Positions 22,544-29,996 of a stretch of 64,000 nt of DNA are shown here, piece after piece; position 1 is the stretch's first letter; the number at the start of each line of letters is the position of its first letter. The position numbers were made by a program, and so were the translations under genes. Source of the stretch: Monocercomonoides exilis PA203 (taxonomy: Eukaryota; Protista; Preaxostyla); the NCBI GenBank assembly GCA_001643675.2, contig LSRY02000014.1, positions 1,116,001 to 1,180,000 on the forward strand. The letters run 5' to 3'. The notes beneath the pieces were generated by a model. The model was not told where the DNA came from, ran no database searches, and worked only from the letters and a program-made list of their open reading frames with translations.

Positions 22544-24670
22544 TCATTTGATCTTTGAATATACTCTCATAATTTTCATTTCATTAATTCTTCCCAAAAA
22601 TTTCCTCATCTCTTTGATTATATAAATATAATCTCCGTCATATATATTCAAGCTCGCATGCGTGAAAAGATCAACAATATCCTTGCAACCTTCTTCTTCA
22701 AAAAGCTCTGCTAATTTCTCACACCGTATAACAGCCATCTTCAATTTGCTTCGGCTTAATTCTTCAGTGTGACTACAATTTAATTTATAAGTTCTTGATT
22801 GCTCATTTGATAAATTCTTTCCTTCCTTCAACTGATTGTTGAGACATGAATACATTTCCAAATACATCTTTGTTAATGTCTTTTCAAATACATACAAAAT
22901 ATCCAGTCGACCATAAACACTATGCGCGTGTGTAATGTAATCGAAGGCACGTTTAAATATTTCAGGGTATTTCGAGAGCTCAAGCATAATGAATTGTGAA
23001 CGAAATAGATTCATCAAAACAACATTTAAATGAGACTGCCATTTAGGCGATGCATATTTTACAATAGGTGGTAAGTCATGATTAGACAATAAAAGAGAAG
23101 ATAAAAAAATAGAGCTTCTCTTCACGGCACGCAAACTAGCAACCAAAAGCTGCAGATACACTGGATTTCTTGTCAGTCGCGCTGCTTTAAATTCGTCTTC
23201 AGTCAAATATTTAATAAATTTAACAACTGACGAAAATGGATCGTTCAATCCGTATTTTTCAACATAATGAATTACTTCTTGGCGGTGATTTATTTGCGAA
23301 TTATTTTCATTAGATACAGAATAATCAACAGTTATTGGATGCAGGTAAATTCCTTTTGTTTGCACAAATGCAGGCCGTATGTGCACAAACGAGAGTGGAA
23401 CGAAGCAATGCTTTCGAGTTGATTGATGAAATGAACAATTTATCCTTTGAATATTTTTCTCTTGCATTCCTTCACTTGTATCCTTACCTTTCAACTGACG
23501 AACCGGAAAATTTAAATTCTTTCCGGGATTTTGCAAGGAAGTAACCTTGTGACAAGAAGCAAACGATTTTGTGCTTTCGGAACATGAAATTATCGCTTTT
23601 GAGATTGTTTTCTGTGGAGACGATGAAACAGAAGATGAGCTTGTAAAGCTTGTTGGCTCGGCACATAACACTGAATTTGATACTGCAGAAGAAGTACAAA
23701 TTGAACTAGTGTCTGATGATGAAGCAAACTGCTCTGATTCGCTTGCATTTAACGAAGAAGATTGCTGAGGGTAATTGTTATCATCTTCAGGCAACTTGTT
23801 GAACCATTCTCTTGTAAGTGAATAATATAATTTCATTACCATTTGAACTCTCTCTTTTCCAAGCCGTGAAATTGTCTCATGATTATAACAGAAAATATAA
23901 TTTAATGATTCAAGGCACAACCATTGATGCAACGGAGGAAAAGAATATGCATTATAAAGCAAAGAAGTGAAAATATTCAGAATTTTCTTTTGCTCCTTCA
24001 ATAAACCAACTTAAAAGCAAATTAAAAGAAATTGTTAAATCTATATATATCATAAATCATTCAGCAATTCCATACTACGACGTACAAATTTCCAAAAGGA
24101 GAAGTACGTAATAAACGAGTCTTCTTTGTTTAATGTTTTATTCATAAGAATTTCAAAAGTATCAGCAATTGCCCTCGTTTCTACAACTGTCAACTTGAAG
24201 CAATTCATTGCCGCAATGCGCGCAATGATGTTTTTCAAGTGCTGAGGCGTTCTTCGCAAAACTATTTGGTTCAGAAGTATTTTTTTCATCTTAGAACGCT
24301 TAAAAATAGATCTAATTTTTGCTTCGTAAATTAATGAGCACGAAGACGACGCTTTAAAAGCAATAAGCTCCAAAAGGGAAAGAATTGAACTTGTCAATTC
24401 AATTGAATGATTTTCAACATAAGTTGAAAGCATCCCAAAAGAATCGGTTGTTAATCCCTGAACTTTATCAAGAGAAATGTTTGCAAGACTTATTCCAAGC
24501 TGCTGAATAATGTCTTGTTGAATTTTTTCATTGCTCTTCTGTGAAAAATAATAAACTGTTTCATCAAAAGATAATTCTTTTCCAGAAGTGCTTTCAAAAT
24601 CTTCTTTTTCTTTAGCCCTTCAAATCTATAAAATTATTTTTGAATTTGCGAAAAACAAATATCAAACATT
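22544..24670 (-). CDS. Lineage-specific hypothetical protein with introns; 5' end uncertain
   Basis: ORFs 22544-24001 and 24050-24433 are joinable by a short GT-AG intron, and the frame extends upstream to about 24620. No recognised domain. Confidence 0.55.
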
Positions 24671-24761
24671 GTGTAAATCCACTTGCTGATTGCTTTTATC
24701 CTTCCACTTAAATATTGATCATGAATAATATAATTTTTTTTGACAAATGAGTTTCTTTATT

Positions 24762-24852
24762 CCTCTGGAACCTGACAAATTGGTTGAAGCCTGGTCTGTC
24801 ACAAAAAAAAAAAAAGAAAAGAAAAAGAAAAAGAAAAGAAAAAGAAAAAGAA

Positions 24853-24889
<37 letters not shown>

Positions 24890-25318
24890 GAAAAATGAAA
24901 AAGAAAAATAAAAAGAAAGTTTTTTAGTTTAAAATAAATATGAAATAAACTATTGCTAAAACTTCTAAAGACTTTTTAAAGCACTTTGGAAAAGATTTGT
25001 TGATAGCATCTGTAATATCTGGTCGTTTTTTGTATTTTGTCAGTGACCGTCAGTGACGGTCAATGACAAATTGTGACAAAAAAATTCATCAACTGACATT
25101 TCGTGACAAAAAAATGAAATATTGGGAACTTGATCATCTTAATCAAATATTTGATTTTTTCAAAAAAAAATAAGAATTGTTGTATGTCGATTTTCAAATT
25201 CATTATTTGAGTAATAAAGAATTGTGAAATCGTTAGAAATAACCATTTTTAACAAATCATAAATATCGTGTCAGTCATTTTGTCATTATTTCAATTTTCT
25301 CTTGTCATGTCACAGAGG
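24762..25318 (+). repeat. Left arm, itself bounded by ~17-bp inverted termini
   Basis: Starts CCTCTGGAACCTGACAA and ends TTGTCATGTCACAGAGG. Contains an (AAAAG)n tract and a central palindrome TGACCGTCAGTGACGGTCA (25044-25062). Confidence 0.88.
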
Positions 25319-25599
25319 GTTTATTTGAATTAATATTTAATAATCTTAGCATAATAATTATAACATTTGCAATTGTAAATTTGACATAAAAATTGTCTCT
25401 CGATCGGTCATGAAACCAATTTTATTTCTCAATTGTCACAAAGAAAGCGTGGGATTTTTTATTCAAAATGATTCAATAATTCATAAGGATCTTATTCGAA
25501 AATTTATTCTGTGAAATTTATATGTTTCTTTCTTTTTTTCATTTCTCTTTTTTGAAATGAAAAAATAAAACTCGGACTTGTTAACCATTTAAAAGGAAA

Positions 25600-26900
25600 T
25601 TCAAATTCACCCGTCCTGATTCCTTCTGAAAACTTAGGGTTATCTGTATCATCAGAAACATATGGATTTGAAGCAAAGATTTATGGATTGATTGGAAACA
25701 ATCCGGTTGTGTTGAATCCGTTACGCTTGTGTAGAAATGATGTTACTATTTTTATTGCTTCTGTTACACGCTCAACTATTATTTTTCTTCTGTCTGCAGC
25801 TTTCATTTTTGAAACATCATTGTGATCCTCCTCCTTCCCAATTTTTCTTTTTCTCAGCAGCTTTCTGAATACGTTGCGAAGAAAACATGCAATTCCAACA
25901 ACAAAAGGTTGCATTATATGATTCATATTTCTAGGCAGAGTGAAAATGAAAATAAAATATTGGCAAATTAAACCAACCCTGAAGAACAAAGACGAGATAA
26001 ATGACCATCAAGAATTGAAAAAACAGAAGAATTGAGTGGAATAACTCCAAGCGACAGACAAATTGTAATCCACGAGCAAAAATAAACAGAAGAACAGAAT
26101 AAAGCATTATTGTCCATCCATCCTGATGCATTGATGTGGATTTCACACGAGCCTGCTTTTTTGTACTCAAAAAGTTCACGAGGAACCGTTTTCAAGGGAG
26201 AAATTATGATTAATGGTGGAGGTGCTGTGCAAGATGGTCCAATGGTGGTCATTATTGATATATGATTTTTTGTGTGATCTTCTGTGGAAGCAGGTGTTCA
26301 TTTGGCTTCGGACGGCACGATAAATTAATGGGAAGAACAAAAAACACCATTCCATTCGTCTGCATTAAATATATTAAGCTTGTTGACAGATGGCTTGATA
26401 TCTTTGTTGAACATAAAATTGAACCATTCTCTGATGTTTGATATGAATGATGAGTTCAATTTGACTGGGGAAATATTTGAGGGAGAGAGTTCTTTCAGAA
26501 TGTGCTTCGAAATGAATCCGGACTTTTTTGTTGGAGAAGGTGGAACAAGTTGTTTAACAAAATGATTAATTACAGGATAAAATCCAAATTGAAGAGATAT
26601 CTTTTATGATTTCGAATTTTGCCTTTGCATTTCCGAATTAATGATTTCACTTAACTCTTGTGTTGTAATTGCATCATATTGTTGAAATTTTTCGTGAACA
26701 ATATCCAACGCATTTTTCTCACCCTCGAAGTGAAGCAAACATGGACTTGTGTGAATTTCCTTTTCGTTCCAAGTTTGTCCGGAGAAATGACATCTGATAG
26801 CGCTTCAAATTTTTAGGGTCGTAATGTTAAACGCTTCTGATATCAAGCAAACCTTCTGTGAAAAAGCATCAGAACATAAATAACTTTTTCGAATAATGAA
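25600..26900 (-). pseudogene. Degenerate pogo/CENP-B-family (DDE_1) transposase
   Basis: Fragments in different frames: IFNADE (first catalytic D), INASGWMDNN, ILDGHLSR (second D), LPRNMNHIMQPFVVG (third-D region altered). Several stops and frameshifts. Confidence 0.8.
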
Positions 26901-27108
26901 TTAGCGTTTTTAACTTCAAATGAAAATTTAATATCTCAAAATTTTTGTTTTCGTGATATTTTTGAAATCGTTGTATTTCTTGAGCAATAAAGTTATGAAT
27001 AGTCAGAAGCAAATATTTGATCAAAATATATCATTATGATTTTATATTATGTTTTTAGAAAAAAAAATTTAACACAAAACATGTTAATATTATACATTTT
27101 CAAGAAAA

Positions 27109-27537
27109 CCTCCGTGACATAACAAGAGAAAATTGAAATAATGACAAAATGACTGACACGATATTTATGATTTGTTAAAAATGGTTATTTCTAACGATTT
27201 CACAATTCTTTATTACTCAAATAATGAATTTGAAAATCGACATACAACAATTCTTATTTTTTTTTGAAAAAATCAAATATTTGATTAAGATGATCAAGTT
27301 CCCAATATTTCATTTTTTTGTCACGAAATGTCAGTTGATGAATTTTTTTGTCACAATTTGTCATTGACCGTCACTGACGGTCACTGACAAAATACAAAAA
27401 ACGACCAGATATTACAGATGCTATCAACAAATCTTTTCCAAAGTGCTTTAAAAAGTCTTTAGAAGTTTTAGCAATAGTTTATTTCATATTTATTTTAAAC
27501 TAAAAAACTTTCTTTTTATTTTTCTTTTTCATTTTTC

Positions 27538-27574
<37 letters not shown>

Positions 27575-27586
27575 TTTTTCTTTTTC

Positions 27587-27619
<33 letters not shown>

Positions 27620-27660
27620 GTGACAGACCAGGCTTCAGCCAATTTGTCAGGTTACAGAGA
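27109..27660 (-). repeat. Right arm, inverted copy of 24762-25318
   Basis: CCTCCGTGACATAACAA ... TTGTCAGGTTACAGAGA. Confidence 0.88.
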
Positions 27661-28348
27661 TTTATAAAAGATGTCAGAAATTGTTGTCCATAATGGCTGA
27701 AACATGGAAAATTATTTTCTTAATTATATTTTTTTTCGGAATTCTGATTCTTCAAATGTTTTATTTCTTTTAAGAGGAATTCATTATTCAAAAGAAAAAA
27801 TAAGAATATTGTTTCTTGAAAAATGATGTTTGAAATAACATTCATAAAAATGTTATCTTCGAATGGAGCAATAACTTTTCAGTGTACAATTAACAGTATC
27901 CAAAGTGAATTATCAAACCGATATTTTTGATAGAGGAAACAAAGATTCAAAAAATATTCACCCAGATGATTATCAAAAAATATTCTCCAAAAAATAATAC
28001 TCACCTGGGGAAAATTCGGACTTTTAAGCTTTTAATGCACAAAGCAAGAAAAAATTAATTCACTCACAACTTTATTTCACTTTCTCAGTTTTCAAAATAA
28101 ATTTGATTCACATTTCCGTAAACAGGCATCGTTGTAATCAAAGTGAAAAGTTCTCCAACATTTCACAAATGTCTAAAAAAAAATGGACCCATTTTTGTTG
28201 TGTTTATTGATCTCAAAAAGTCAATAAAAAGTGCATAATTTTTCAATGAAAATGCCAGAAGGAAAATATTTTGCCCCACCGGATAAAAAATATTCATTGC
28301 GAAAAAAATATGTATTGAATTGGTTAATTATTTCGAATTATTGCAAAA

Positions 28349-28770
28349 TGTGTAATTCTTTTTGAAAAGTCGCAAATGTTTAATTTTCAAATAAATCATG
28401 AATTTCATGATGTGCTCAAATATCTGTTTCTTCTCACGAATCTTTTTCGGAATGAGTGAAATAGCATTATTCAGAAATAGATTGCATATTAGTGAAGTTT
28501 GGAGTACGTTAACAAAAATTTGAACAAAATATGAAAATTTTAATTTATTTGGAAATTAAACATTTGAAAGTTTTCAAAAAGAATTACCCATATCTTGATC
28601 AAAATTCTGTTAACACTCTTGAATCAACACACAAGAATGTGTGCAGTAGTTTTATCAAGAAATAGCTTTTTAATTAGTGAAGTTTTATAAGTATGAACAG
28701 AAATTTGATCAAAGTTAGAAAAAAAATACATTATTTGTCAATTACACATTTGAGACTTTCCAAAAAATTT
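28349..28770. repeat. Degenerate inverted repeat (28349-28409 vs 28531-28590) plus a diverged direct copy near 28670-28770
   Basis: TGTGTAATTCTTTTTGAAAAGTCGCAAATGTTTAATTTTCAAATAAAT pairs with ATTTATTTGGAAATTAAACATTTGAAAGTTTTCAAAAAGAATTACCCA. Confidence 0.7.
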
Positions 28771-28833: not shown

Positions 28834-29047
28834 TAATTGGCTGATTCTTTTTGAAATCATACTTTCGTTCGAGTTTTGATCAAAATTTTTTTCTCAATGG
28901 GATTTTGAAAAATTGAACAAAACTGATAACACACGTTGTTTCTGATGTTGTTATTGCAGAAACATATTTTAACAAGAATCCCATTAAAATAAAAATTTTG
29001 ATCAAAACAAGAATGAAAGTATGATTTCAAAAAGAATCAGCCAATTA
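28834..29047. mobile_element. MITE-like hairpin, 214 bp, ~70-bp arms, TA at both ends
   Basis: TAATTGGCTGATTCTTTTTGAAATCATACTTTC... pairs with ...GAAAGTATGATTTCAAAAAGAATCAGCCAATTA. Confidence 0.75.
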
Positions 29048-29590: not shown

Positions 29591-29996
29591 TAATACTAAT
29601 ATCGCATAAAATACCGGACATCGCACAAAATACCGGACAAGATCGATATCTCAATAACTGCAAGAGAAATAATTCTGACAATTTTCCTCAAAATATATTT
29701 CATTAATACAGACTCATTAGATAAACGTGACTTTCAACACAGCTTCATTTGTGCTCAGAAAGAATTATTTTTGAAATTTCGGAGAAATAGGATTTTGAGT
29801 TTCTCTGAGATTTAATAATTAATTCTTTCTGAGCACAAATGAAGCTGTGTTGAAAGTCACGTTTATCTAATGAGTCAGTATTAATGAAATATATTTTGAG
29901 GAAAATTATCAGAATTATTCCACTTGCGGTTATTATGAAATCGACCTTGTCCGGTATTTTGTGCGATGTCCTGTATTTTATGCGATATCCGTATTA
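29591..29996. mobile_element. Near-perfect ~405-bp palindromic MITE (Tc1/mariner/pogo-like, TA-flanked)
   Basis: Arms of about 180-200 bp are reverse-complementary. Each end has two tandem 20-bp ATCGCAYAAAATACCGGAC units. TA at 29594-29595 and 29992-29993. Confidence 0.85.

What the first reader, a model, noticed from the sequence alone, without database searches (positions are those of the whole stretch)
24762..27660. Composite-transposon-like structure: two inverted self-contained MITE-like arms around a dead transposase
Seen: each ~555-bp arm has its own inverted termini (outer CTCTG[G/T]AACCTGACAA; inner, reverse-complemented, CTC[T/C]GTGACAT[G/A]ACAA), so the element has four potential ends. 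Known: pogo elements usually have short TIRs and TA target duplications, and Tc1 IR/DR elements have direct, not inverted, inner repeats. No TA abuts these termini; there is only an imperfect TTTATT/TTTATA flank. Inference: a eukaryotic analogue of a bacterial composite transposon, or an unusual long-TIR pogo class whose single arms could move alone.
Basis: partly seen in the sequence, partly recalled or inferred. Interest (0 to 1): 0.8.

Follow-up and report, generated by a model that had tools for sequence, protein, structure and literature searches.

The report
Two mirrored MITEs around dead pogo
In the protist Monocercomonoides exilis, two mirror-image copies of a common small jumping element sit on either side of an unrelated, long-dead pogo-type transposon; this looks like a one-off pile-up of old mobile DNA, and nothing shows that it moves as a unit.

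Summary
Two inverted arms of about 560 bp (24758-25322 and 27105-27664) flank 1.78 kb, and each arm has its own inverted ends.

- The arms are copies of an abundant miniature transposon (MITE): 209 termini genome-wide, with a 21-bp TIR beginning TATACCTCTGTGAC.
- About 24 of 26 solo copies examined keep a recognisable 8-bp target duplication, 16 of them perfect. That is not a pogo signature.
- The internal element (25447-27075) is a separate, full-length but dead pogo/DDE_1 transposon with its own short TIRs.
- The 11 copies examined elsewhere show no arm within 1.5 kb, and most that keep their ends show a TA target duplication.
- That pogo sits inside a ~150-bp fragment of a third repeat, and its empty site is visible in paralogues.

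So this is not a long-TIR pogo. I found no evidence that the four-ended unit ever moved. No second copy was seen. No target duplication fits any model tested. Both outer flanks are rearranged old repeats.

The two arms share 39 derived changes and are 100% identical over about 455 bp. All four substitutions lie within 22 nt of the arm ends. They are therefore copies of one another, by arm-to-arm gene conversion or by a local inverted duplication.

Verdict: an ordinary nested transposon graveyard, of low interest.

The parts
22800..24747 (.). Left-flank repeat. This is a truncated copy of a repeat of at least 2.1 kb that has about five copies in the genome.
   Evidence: 77-86% identity to L062-L065, ending at 24725-24747; the paralogues stay homologous to each other for about 200 bp beyond this point, and that stretch is missing from the window. 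The sequence next to arm L has therefore been deleted or rearranged.
24758..25322 (+). Arm L, an old copy of an abundant MITE with an 8-bp target duplication. Outer TIR 24758-24778, (GAAAA)n microsatellite about 24803-24914, inner TIR 25302-25322.
   Evidence: It is 89% identical to the family consensus. Each terminus differs from the 21-nt consensus TIR at 3 positions. There is no matching 8-bp duplication (AGTTTCTT against ATTTGAAT, 4 of 8).
25323..25446 (+). Spacer part 1, a fragment of a third repeat (the last ~140 bp of a longer element).
   Evidence: 72-77% identity to L058, L059 and L035. In those loci the homology runs on upstream for 45-315 bp, where the window has arm L instead.
25447..27075 (-). 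Full-length but dead pogo-like (DDE_1) DNA transposon, inserted into the spacer repeat.
   Evidence: 1629 bp, 86.9% identical to the family consensus, with sharp ends shared with the full-length relatives; relatives L032 and L033 hit PF03184 at 32.9 and 42.6 bits (cut-off 22), and the window fragment hits it weakly (E 0.0067); two frames and 7 stops; the uninterrupted site is visible in L058 and L059.
27076..27104 (+). Spacer part 2, the continuation of the third repeat on the far side of the pogo insertion.
   Evidence: window ...CACAAAGAAA[pogo]AAAACATGTTAAT... matches the contiguous ...CACAAAGTGAAACATGTTAAAT... in L058 (reverse strand).
27105..27664 (-). Arm R, the same MITE in inverted orientation. 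Inner TIR 27105-27125, microsatellite about 27509-27619, outer TIR 27644-27664.
   Evidence: sister to arm L with 100/100 support, 39 shared derived substitutions against 1 and 2 private ones. There is no 8-bp duplication (TTTTCAAG against TAAAAGAT).
27665..28278 (.). Right flank. It is made of other repeat families and is duplicated, together with the outer end of arm R, on contig C27.
   Evidence: L068 matches window 27562-28278 at 82.8%. The match runs through the arm's microsatellite, its outer 40 bp and the junction, and nothing upstream in L068 matches the window.

Best explanation
This is an accidental, immobile mosaic in a transposon-rich, gene-poor stretch of the Monocercomonoides exilis genome. 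Three unrelated mobile-element families are involved.

Inferred order of events:
1. A fragment of an older repeat lay at this site.
2. A pogo-type (DDE_1) transposon inserted into it. That copy has since decayed to 13% from its family consensus.
3. Copies of a non-coding MITE of about 450-550 bp came to lie on both sides in opposite orientation. This MITE has a 21-bp TIR (TATACCTCTGTGAC...) and makes 8-bp target duplications. It is mobilised in trans by an unidentified transposase of the kind that makes 8-bp duplications, Merlin or hAT.

The two arms are not independent draws from the MITE family. They share about 10% of derived changes and are identical in their interior. One arm was therefore copied onto the other long after the original insertion. 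I think the most likely route is gene conversion between the closely spaced inverted repeats. A local inverted duplication of a single old copy is the alternative.

The flanks next to the arms have been deleted or rearranged, which erased any target duplications. In principle the two outward-facing ends could be used together by the MITE's transposase, as in a macrotransposon. Nothing indicates that this ever happened.

What is shown: the anatomy, the independence of the three families, the solo mobility of the arms, and the sister relation of the two arms. What is inferred: the order of events and conversion as the copying mechanism.
For: Organism: the pogo relative's ORF is 100% identical to a M. 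exilis protein.

Arms are an independent MITE:
- At least 158 candidate copies by DNA search.
- 209 termini by pattern search, against 2 in the control.
- 50 exact outer termini, with only one other convergent outer/outer pair, on C25.
- Of 26 solo copies, 16 have a perfect 8-bp target duplication, 5 have 7 of 8 and 1 has 6 of 8; two more match after a 1-nt shift.

Pogo is independent:
- Eleven copies examined elsewhere (10 near full length) with sharp common ends and short TIRs, none with an arm within 1.5 kb; most that keep their ends are flanked by TA.
- DDE_1 scores above the cut-off in relatives.
- The empty site is seen in L058 and L059.

Arms are copies of each other:
- The family tree is star-like, and winL and winR are sisters at 100/100 on a stem of 0.096, with tips of 0.0025 and 0.0059.
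- They share 39 derived changes against 3 private ones.
- The interior is identical over about 455 bp, and all 4 substitutions lie within 22 nt of the arm ends. My estimate of the chance of that placement is about 1e-4.
- The inverted repeat stops at the MITE ends; flank similarity is not significant, p about 0.6-0.7.

No unit mobility:
- No target duplication in the solo, composite or inversion-swapped models.
- The left-flank repeat is truncated by about 200 bp at arm L.
- The junction of arm R with its flank is duplicated on C27 at 83% identity without the rest of the structure.

Context: other arm pairs on C25 and C47 are parts of 930-bp inverted segmental duplications at 97.8% and 99.2%. 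This shows that near-identical inverted repeats are common in this genome.
Against: - Neither arm keeps an 8-bp target duplication, although about 24 of 26 solo copies do, including copies that are just as old. Two clean independent insertions followed by conversion do not predict this, so extra flank rearrangements must be assumed. One such rearrangement, on the left side, is documented.
- Shared derived states reach to within 7 nt of the outer end. Descent from a single copy therefore fits about as well as conversion between two insertions.
- The genome census is incomplete. Only 40 of 158 arm candidates were scored, and further sequence could not be fetched.
- The autonomous partner of the MITE was not found, so whether the family is still active, or was active recently, is unknown.
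Confidence: 0.7

Rival explanations
1. A recent local inverted duplication. Only one old MITE copy existed here, probably arm R. A replication or repair error, or an aberrant transposition event, then made a second copy in inverted orientation on the other side of the pogo fossil.
For: 39 shared derived changes against 3 private ones, and an identical interior. Shared derived states reach almost to the termini. The junction of arm R with its flank is old. Inverted segmental duplications are frequent in this genome (pairs with identical scores).
Against: - The duplicated segment would have to begin and end at the MITE termini, within about 5 nt. That is unlikely for a duplication not made by a transposase. 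The C25 and C47 duplications overrun the MITE by hundreds of bp.
- A recent transposase-made copy should have a perfect 8-bp duplication, and neither arm has one.
- The substitutions cluster at the arm ends rather than being spread evenly.
Confidence: 0.22
2. A true eukaryotic composite transposon (macrotransposon). The cognate transposase used the two outward-facing MITE ends to move the whole 2.9-kb unit, pogo fossil included, into this site.
For: Four ends are present, and the two outer ones are in the correct inverted orientation. The arms are demonstrably mobile on their own. Precedents exist in the literature: Ac macrotransposons (PMC9910405), the foldback-flanked Ising TE (PMC6431247) and KolobokP (PMC9587614).
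Against: - No other copy of the unit was seen: the 11 other pogo copies examined lack arms.
- Among 50 exact outer ends there is only one other convergent pair, and that one lies inside a larger segmental inverted repeat.
- The outer 8-mers match at 1 of 8.
- The right junction is shared with C27 without the rest of the structure.
- All four termini differ from the consensus at 3-4 of 21 positions.
- The youngest family members seen are about 4% from the consensus.
Confidence: 0.06
3. An unusual pogo lineage with long (560-bp) TIRs, whose TIRs gave rise to the solo elements.
For: Only the juxtaposition at this one locus.
Against: - The pogo family has its own 14-bp TIRs and TA duplications, with sharp ends at 25447 and 27075.
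- The 11 relatives examined elsewhere lack arms.
- The arms make 8-bp rather than TA duplications.
- About 150 bp of an unrelated repeat separates the pogo ends from the arms, and the pogo empty site is seen elsewhere.
Confidence: 0.01
4. An assembly or polishing artefact. Either the inverted arrangement or the perfect interior identity was produced by the ONT assembly or by short-read polishing.
For: The assembly is ONT-based and polished with Illumina reads. Near-identical inverted repeats are strikingly common in it.
Against: - The arms flank 1.78 kb of unique sequence and have different outer flanks. That is unlike fold-back read chimeras.
- 2.9 kb is easily spanned by single ONT reads.
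- The arms differ in microsatellite length and at 4 terminal positions.
Confidence: 0.03

Closest known systems
Nested insertions of DNA transposons and MITEs in repeat-rich regions (a 'transposon graveyard')
   Same: Several unrelated, decayed elements are inserted into or next to one another. The pogo's empty site can be recovered from paralogues. The flanks are themselves repeats.
   Different: The two MITE copies happen to be inverted, and they are far more alike (identical interior) than their age would allow.
Macrotransposons and composite elements in eukaryotes: maize Ac/Ds macrotransposons (PMC9910405), the Drosophila Ising TE flanked by foldback elements (PMC6431247), KolobokP composite-like elements with mobile solo repeats (PMC9587614)
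   Same: Two self-contained elements with their own inverted ends bracket other DNA. The bracketing elements also occur, and move, on their own.
   Different: Those cases have documented excision or reinsertion, many copies, or target duplications around the unit. Here there is a single copy, no target duplication and degenerate ends. KolobokP's repeats are direct and belong to the same element as its transposase, whereas here the cargo transposase belongs to a different superfamily.
Pogo/Tigger-type (DDE_1) Tc1/mariner-superfamily transposons
   Same: For the internal element: a PF03184 domain in relatives, short TIRs, TA target duplication and a length of about 1.6 kb.
   Different: The window copy is dead (7 stops, 1 frameshift), and its flanking dinucleotides now read AA/AA.
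MITEs with 8-bp target duplications (Merlin- or hAT-derived). Merlin families making 8-bp duplications are reported in Monocercomonoides (PMC8101967).
   Same: For the arms: 440-560 bp, non-coding, 21-bp TIR, 8-bp target duplication, at least 100 copies, star-like phylogeny.
   Different: The termini begin TATACC. That is neither the Merlin terminal GG described in PMC8101967 nor the hAT terminal motif as I recall it (YARNG, from memory and not checked here). No autonomous partner was found.
Concerted evolution of closely spaced inverted repeats by gene conversion. This rests on my own knowledge, for example palindrome arms on sex chromosomes. Earlier notes of this scan report long-TIR Merlin arms in this genome that are 'kept identical'.
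   Same: Arm-to-arm identity far exceeds the age of the sequence. The differences are confined to the arm edges.
   Different: Conversion here is inferred from a single locus and is not demonstrated. The arms are only 560 bp long.

Membership tests
Composite transposon / macrotransposon | Two self-contained terminal elements, each with its own inverted ends, bracket other DNA | tested here: met
   four termini are present, and each arm matches the full solo element.
Composite transposon / macrotransposon | The terminal elements are individually mobile | tested here: met
   of 26 solo copies, 16 have a perfect 8-bp target duplication, 5 have 7 of 8 and 1 has 6 of 8; two more match after a 1-nt shift; 209 termini, nearly all in solo-sized convergent pairs.
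Composite transposon / macrotransposon | The whole unit is flanked by a target duplication of the arm's characteristic length (8 bp) | tested here: not met
   AGTTTCTT against TAAAAGAT, 1 of 8. The alternative register gives CTTTATTC against ATTTATAA, 5 of 8, which is not significant in this AT-rich sequence.
Composite transposon / macrotransposon | The same unit recurs at other loci, or is polymorphic | tested here: not met
   the 11 other pogo copies examined have no arm within 1.5 kb; the only other outer/outer pair (C25) lies inside a 930-bp segmental inverted repeat. The census is incomplete, and polymorphism could not be tested.
Long-TIR pogo element | The long arms are the ends of the transposase-bearing element in all or most copies | tested here: not met
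   the family ends at its own short TIRs (GCGTCGTG... / ...CACCGC), and no other copy has arms.
Pogo/Tc1-mariner superfamily (internal element) | DDE_1-type transposase domain | tested here: met
   PF03184 scores 32.9 and 42.6 bits in L032 and L033 (cut-off 22); the window fragment scores only 16.5 bits.
Pogo/Tc1-mariner superfamily (internal element) | TA target-site duplication and short TIRs | tested here: met
   TA is present on the left in 6 of 8 copies and on the right in 4 of 5. The window copy now reads AA/AA.
MITE (arms) | Short, non-coding, with TIRs, flanked by target duplications, high copy number | tested here: met
   No ORF or protein-domain signal was looked for beyond the ORF listing; the arms are AT-rich and contain a (GAAAA)n tract.
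hAT superfamily (arms) | 8-bp target duplication, terminal YARNG-type motif (from memory, not checked) and a related hAT transposase-bearing parent | tested here: inconclusive
   The 8-bp duplication is met. The termini read TATAC and do not fit the motif as I recall it. hAT dimerisation domains exist in the genome, but none lies between arm-type termini in the lists that were returned.
Merlin superfamily (arms) | 8-9-bp target duplication, terminal 5'-GG (PMC8101967) and a related IS1595-type transposase-bearing parent | tested here: inconclusive
   The 8-bp duplication is met. The terminal GG is not met. Merlin is very abundant, with at least 575 candidates, and it lies near arms in L008, L018 and L028, but it is not bounded by arm-type termini there.

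The most novel reading that the evidence does not exclude
The locus is a natural test case showing that M. exilis homogenises any closely spaced inverted repeats by arm-to-arm gene conversion that does not depend on a transposase. Here the process would be acting on two MITE copies that merely happen to bracket an unrelated dead pogo. That would make the 'arms kept identical' property reported for this genome's long-TIR Merlin elements a feature of the host genome rather than of those transposons. A bolder variant is that such converted MITE pairs are the raw material from which the genome's long-TIR elements and macrotransposons arise.
Probability: 0.35. Interest if true: 0.45.

Novelty: new member of a known kind. 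Interest (0 to 1): 0.2.

Why it matters
The locus itself matters little. It is a dead, single-copy pile-up of three transposon families, and the idea of a eukaryotic composite transposon already has better-documented examples: Ac macrotransposons, the foldback-flanked TE of Drosophila, and KolobokP.

There are two modest gains.
- It defines two repeat families, in a genome where 35% of the sequence is 'unclassified repeat' (PMC8767320), that I did not find described in the papers searched. One is a MITE of about 450-550 bp that makes 8-bp target duplications. The other is a 1.63-kb pogo/DDE_1 family that inserts at TA.
- It adds one clean example in which inverted repeats are far more alike than their age allows, with the differences confined to the arm edges. 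This bears on whether arm homogenisation in this genome is a general host process.

Tried and rejected
- **Fetching longer elements.** I tried to fetch elements bounded by arm-type termini as candidate autonomous partners, plus wider flanks of the C25, C47 and C27 loci. The candidates were C8:1092209-1096449 (4.2 kb), C9:232632-239914 (7.3 kb) and C21:937747-939557 (1.8 kb). The partner and a full census therefore remain open.
- **Superfamily of the arms.** Merlin (PF12762) and hAT (PF05699) searches of the genome returned many loci, but none lay between arm-type termini in the lists returned. The Merlin ORFs near arms in L008, L018 and L028 are not bounded by arm-type ends. The supplements of the Merlin survey paper held no matching TIR.
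- **Target duplications.** I tested each arm alone, the composite, and the swapped pattern expected after inversion between the arms. None matched. A register-shifted 7 of 8 match, GTTTCTTT against GTTTATTT, would need two ad hoc deletions, so I did not accept it.
- **Inverted repeat beyond the arms.** Local alignment against shuffled flanks gave p of about 0.6-0.7 on both the inner and the outer sides.
- **Remainder of the left-flank repeat on the far side.** Finding it there would indicate an insertion or an inversion. It was not found.
- **Pfam on the window's own transposase fragments.** This gave only a sub-threshold DDE_1 hit, so I used relatives instead.
- **Solved structures.** The search gave nothing useful.
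- A misreading of the ruler around 27060-27110 was caught and corrected.
Full report
**Organism and setting**

The window is C8:1116001-1180000 of an 82.3-Mb, 101-contig eukaryotic assembly. The ORF of a relative of the internal transposase is 100% identical to a protein annotated in Monocercomonoides exilis. The size and contig number match the published ONT assembly of that oxymonad. In that assembly 46% of the sequence is repeats and 35% is 'unclassified' (PMC8767320). The sequence is not human and is not from a pathogen. The finding lies in a block of 26-32% GC at about 22-32 kb, between denser, GC-richer stretches.

**Check of the observation**

The inverted repeat is real.
- The repeat finder reports a 518-nt pair at 97%.
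- blastn reports 24763-25342 against 27659-27088, 580 nt at 97.1%.
- No TA abuts them.

Comparison with other copies moves each boundary 4-5 nt outwards. The family consensus ends are TATAC|CTCTGTGACCTGACAA... and ...TTGTCATGTCACAGAGG|TATA, which form a 21-bp TIR with one mismatch. The arms are therefore 24758-25322 (+) and 27105-27664 (-).

**What the arms are**

- A DNA search with the unique 416 bp of arm L found at least 158 candidates. The 40 that were scored are 83-89% identical to the window arm.
- A pattern search for the terminus found 209 sites, against 2 for the reversed control. Most lie in convergent pairs 420-560 bp apart, which are solo elements.
- Of 26 distinct solo copies with both ends found, 16 have a perfect 8-bp target duplication, five have 7 of 8 and one has 6 of 8. 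Two more match after a 1-nt register shift.
- This includes copies as far from the consensus as the window arms (L004 and L005, 89%).
- Element length varies from 440 to 560 bp, largely through an internal (GAAAA)n tract.
- The family tree is star-like, with copies 89-96% identical to the consensus. That is the pattern of one old burst of transposition.

The arms are thus an abundant, old, non-coding MITE that makes 8-bp duplications. This excludes pogo or Tc1/mariner mobilisation.

The superfamily is unresolved. Both Merlin (at least 575 candidate loci) and hAT (41 matches) are present in the genome. Merlin families with 8-bp duplications are published for this organism (PMC8101967). However, the termini fit neither the Merlin GG described there nor the hAT motif as I recall it. 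No transposase gene was found between arm-type ends. Candidate longer elements could not be fetched.

**What the inside is**

The stretch 25447-27075 is a complete copy, 1629 bp, of a separate family.
- I compared eleven copies found elsewhere, ten of them near full length. The full-length ones share sharp ends with the window copy at both positions.
- Their ends are short imperfect TIRs (GCGTCGTGTTTTTT... / ...AAAAAAAATCACCGC).
- TA flanks 6 of 8 left ends and 4 of 5 right ends.
- Two relatives keep ORFs of 441 and 403 aa that hit Pfam DDE_1 (PF03184) at 32.9 and 42.6 bits, against a cut-off of 22.
- The window copy is 86.9% identical to the family consensus and has essentially no indels.
- Against the 441-aa ORF it is split over two frames and carries 7 stops.
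- None of the relatives has an arm within the 1.5 kb of flank that I hold.

The 'long-TIR pogo' reading is therefore refuted within this sample.

**The spacer**

About 150 bp of a third repeat lies between the arms and the pogo ends, at 25323-25446 and 27076-27104.
- In L058, L059 and L035 the two halves are contiguous. Window ...CACAAAGAAA[pogo]AAAACATGTTAAT... corresponds to ...CACAAAGTGAAACATGTTAAAT... in L058. This gives the pogo's empty site.
- In those loci the homology continues 45-315 bp upstream of the point where the window has arm L.
- That upstream part is not found on the other side of arm L. The junction of arm L with the spacer is therefore a breakpoint and not a simple insertion.

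**The outer flanks**

*Left.* The stretch 22800-24747 belongs to a repeat with five copies. The paralogues run on together for about 200 bp beyond the point where the window copy stops, 10-20 nt from arm L. Those 200 bp occur nowhere in the window. Sequence next to arm L has been lost.

*Right.* 27562-28278 recurs on contig C27 (L068) at 82.8% identity. This stretch comprises the microsatellite of arm R, its outer 40 bp, the junction, and 620 bp of flank made of other repeats. Nothing upstream in L068 matches the window. The junction of arm R with its flank therefore predates an old segmental duplication. It is not the edge of a unit that moved as a whole.

**Relation of the two arms**

- In the family tree the two arms are sisters (100/100) on a stem of 0.096 substitutions per site, with tips of 0.0025 and 0.0059.
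- They share 39 changes relative to the consensus and have 1 and 2 private ones.
- The best other copy is only 88-89% identical.
- In the pairwise alignment about 455 bp of interior are identical.
- Apart from microsatellite length, all four substitutions lie within 22 nt of the arm ends. Placing 4 changes at random over about 460 positions would give this with a probability of about 1e-4 by my arithmetic.
- Similarity does not extend beyond the MITE ends: p is 0.72 on the inner side and 0.62 on the outer side against shuffles.

One arm was therefore copied onto the other long after the original insertion, and the copied tract equals the element.

**Which copying mechanism**

Gene conversion between closely spaced inverted repeats explains three things: the coincidence with the element's boundaries, the age paradox, and the divergence at the edges.

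A recent transposition would have left a perfect 8-bp duplication. Neither arm has one.
- Arm L alone: 4 of 8.
- Arm R alone: at most 2 of 8.
- The whole unit: 1 of 8.
- The pattern expected after inversion between the arms: 1 of 8 and 3 of 8.

A duplication not made by a transposase would not be expected to stop at the element's ends. The two other arm pairs in the genome show this. On C25 the spacer is about 450 bp, and on C47 it is about 7 kb. Both are parts of 930-bp inverted segmental duplications at 97.8% and 99.2% that overrun the MITE on both sides.

There is an honest difficulty. About 24 of 26 solo copies keep their target duplications, so two clean insertions followed by conversion do not explain why both arms lack one. 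Flank rearrangements must be added. One is documented on the left, and another is implied at the junction of arm L with the spacer. I give conversion about 0.5 and local inverted duplication about 0.2-0.25. Either way the larger claim stands at about 0.7: this is an accidental, immobile mosaic.

**Is chance proximity plausible?**

This is an inference. With about 105 copies (209 termini) in 82 Mb, I expect about 0.4 pairs within 3 kb under uniform placement. The figure is higher if copies cluster in the repeat-rich half of the genome. One such pair in the genome needs no special explanation.

**Test as a composite transposon**

The anatomy fits: four ends, the outer pair correctly inverted, and arms that are mobile alone. 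The functional hallmarks do not.
- There is no target duplication around the unit.
- No second copy was found.
- Among 50 exact outer termini there is only one other convergent pair, and that is the C25 segmental repeat.
- All four ends differ from the consensus TIR at 3-4 of 21 positions.
- The family's youngest members seen are about 4% from the consensus.

Eukaryotic precedents for the concept already exist: Ac macrotransposons with documented excision (PMC9910405), the Ising TE flanked by foldback elements (PMC6431247), and KolobokP with mobile solo terminal repeats (PMC9587614).

**Earlier notes of this scan**

These notes are unchecked leads. They describe long-TIR Merlin elements in this genome whose arms are 'kept identical by copying', fold-back palindromes centred on small hairpin elements, and a 408-bp Merlin MITE with 8-bp duplications. 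They agree with what I saw in passing:
- a near-perfect palindrome of at least 2.25 kb in L059;
- several Merlin and hAT hits that occur as nearby inverted pairs with identical scores.

This suggests that arm homogenisation may be a general property of the genome. I did not test that beyond this locus.

**Verdict**

The structure is an ordinary nested cluster of old transposons. Its one mildly notable feature is that the two inverted MITE copies are copies of each other. Interest is low.

Noticed in passing
window 29591-29996; 28834-29047; 28348-28591: Three further self-complementary (hairpin or foldback-type) elements lie just downstream of the finding. They are 406 nt at 89%, about 214 nt at 77% and about 244 nt at 69% self-complementary. 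Relatives are found in several fetched loci.
   Followed up: no
L059 866-3117 (G000:C42, about 485.6-487.9 kb): A near-perfect palindrome of at least 2.25 kb (98.8%) with its centre near L059:1990. It reaches the end of the fetched locus. Each of its arms contains the spacer-type repeat.
   Followed up: partly
G000: C16:1002503/1012414; C19:624302/625146; C25:1119886/1149312; C80:178071/180449; C50:457757/464043: Merlin and hAT domain hits occur as nearby pairs on opposite strands, with identical scores and identical stop patterns. This suggests that many recent or homogenised inverted duplications of transposon-bearing segments exist in this genome.
   Followed up: no
G000:C8:1092209-1096449; C9:232632-239914; C21:937747-939557; C18:1171733-1173165: Convergent arm-type termini lie 1.4-7.3 kb apart. 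These could be MITE copies split by nested insertions, or candidates for the unknown autonomous partner. The sequence could not be fetched.
   Followed up: no
L035 1316-1452 (G000:C43): A second pogo copy of the same family lies about 48 bp from a copy of the same spacer-type repeat that hosts the window's pogo. This could be chance or a target preference.
   Followed up: no
L073 380-881 (G000:C25, about 2418.9-2419.4 kb): A small element whose two 144-bp inverted ends resemble the inner 144 bp of the arm (74% identity). It is a related family that shares the inner-type terminus.
   Followed up: no
window 22800-24747: A repeat family of at least 2.1 kb with about five copies at 77-86% identity. 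Its nature is unknown. The window copy is truncated by about 200 bp exactly next to arm L.
   Followed up: partly
L008, L018, L028: Three of 28 arm loci carry a Merlin-type ORF within 1.5 kb of the MITE. That is more than the roughly 2% I would expect from the Merlin density. None of these ORFs is bounded by arm-type termini.
   Followed up: partly
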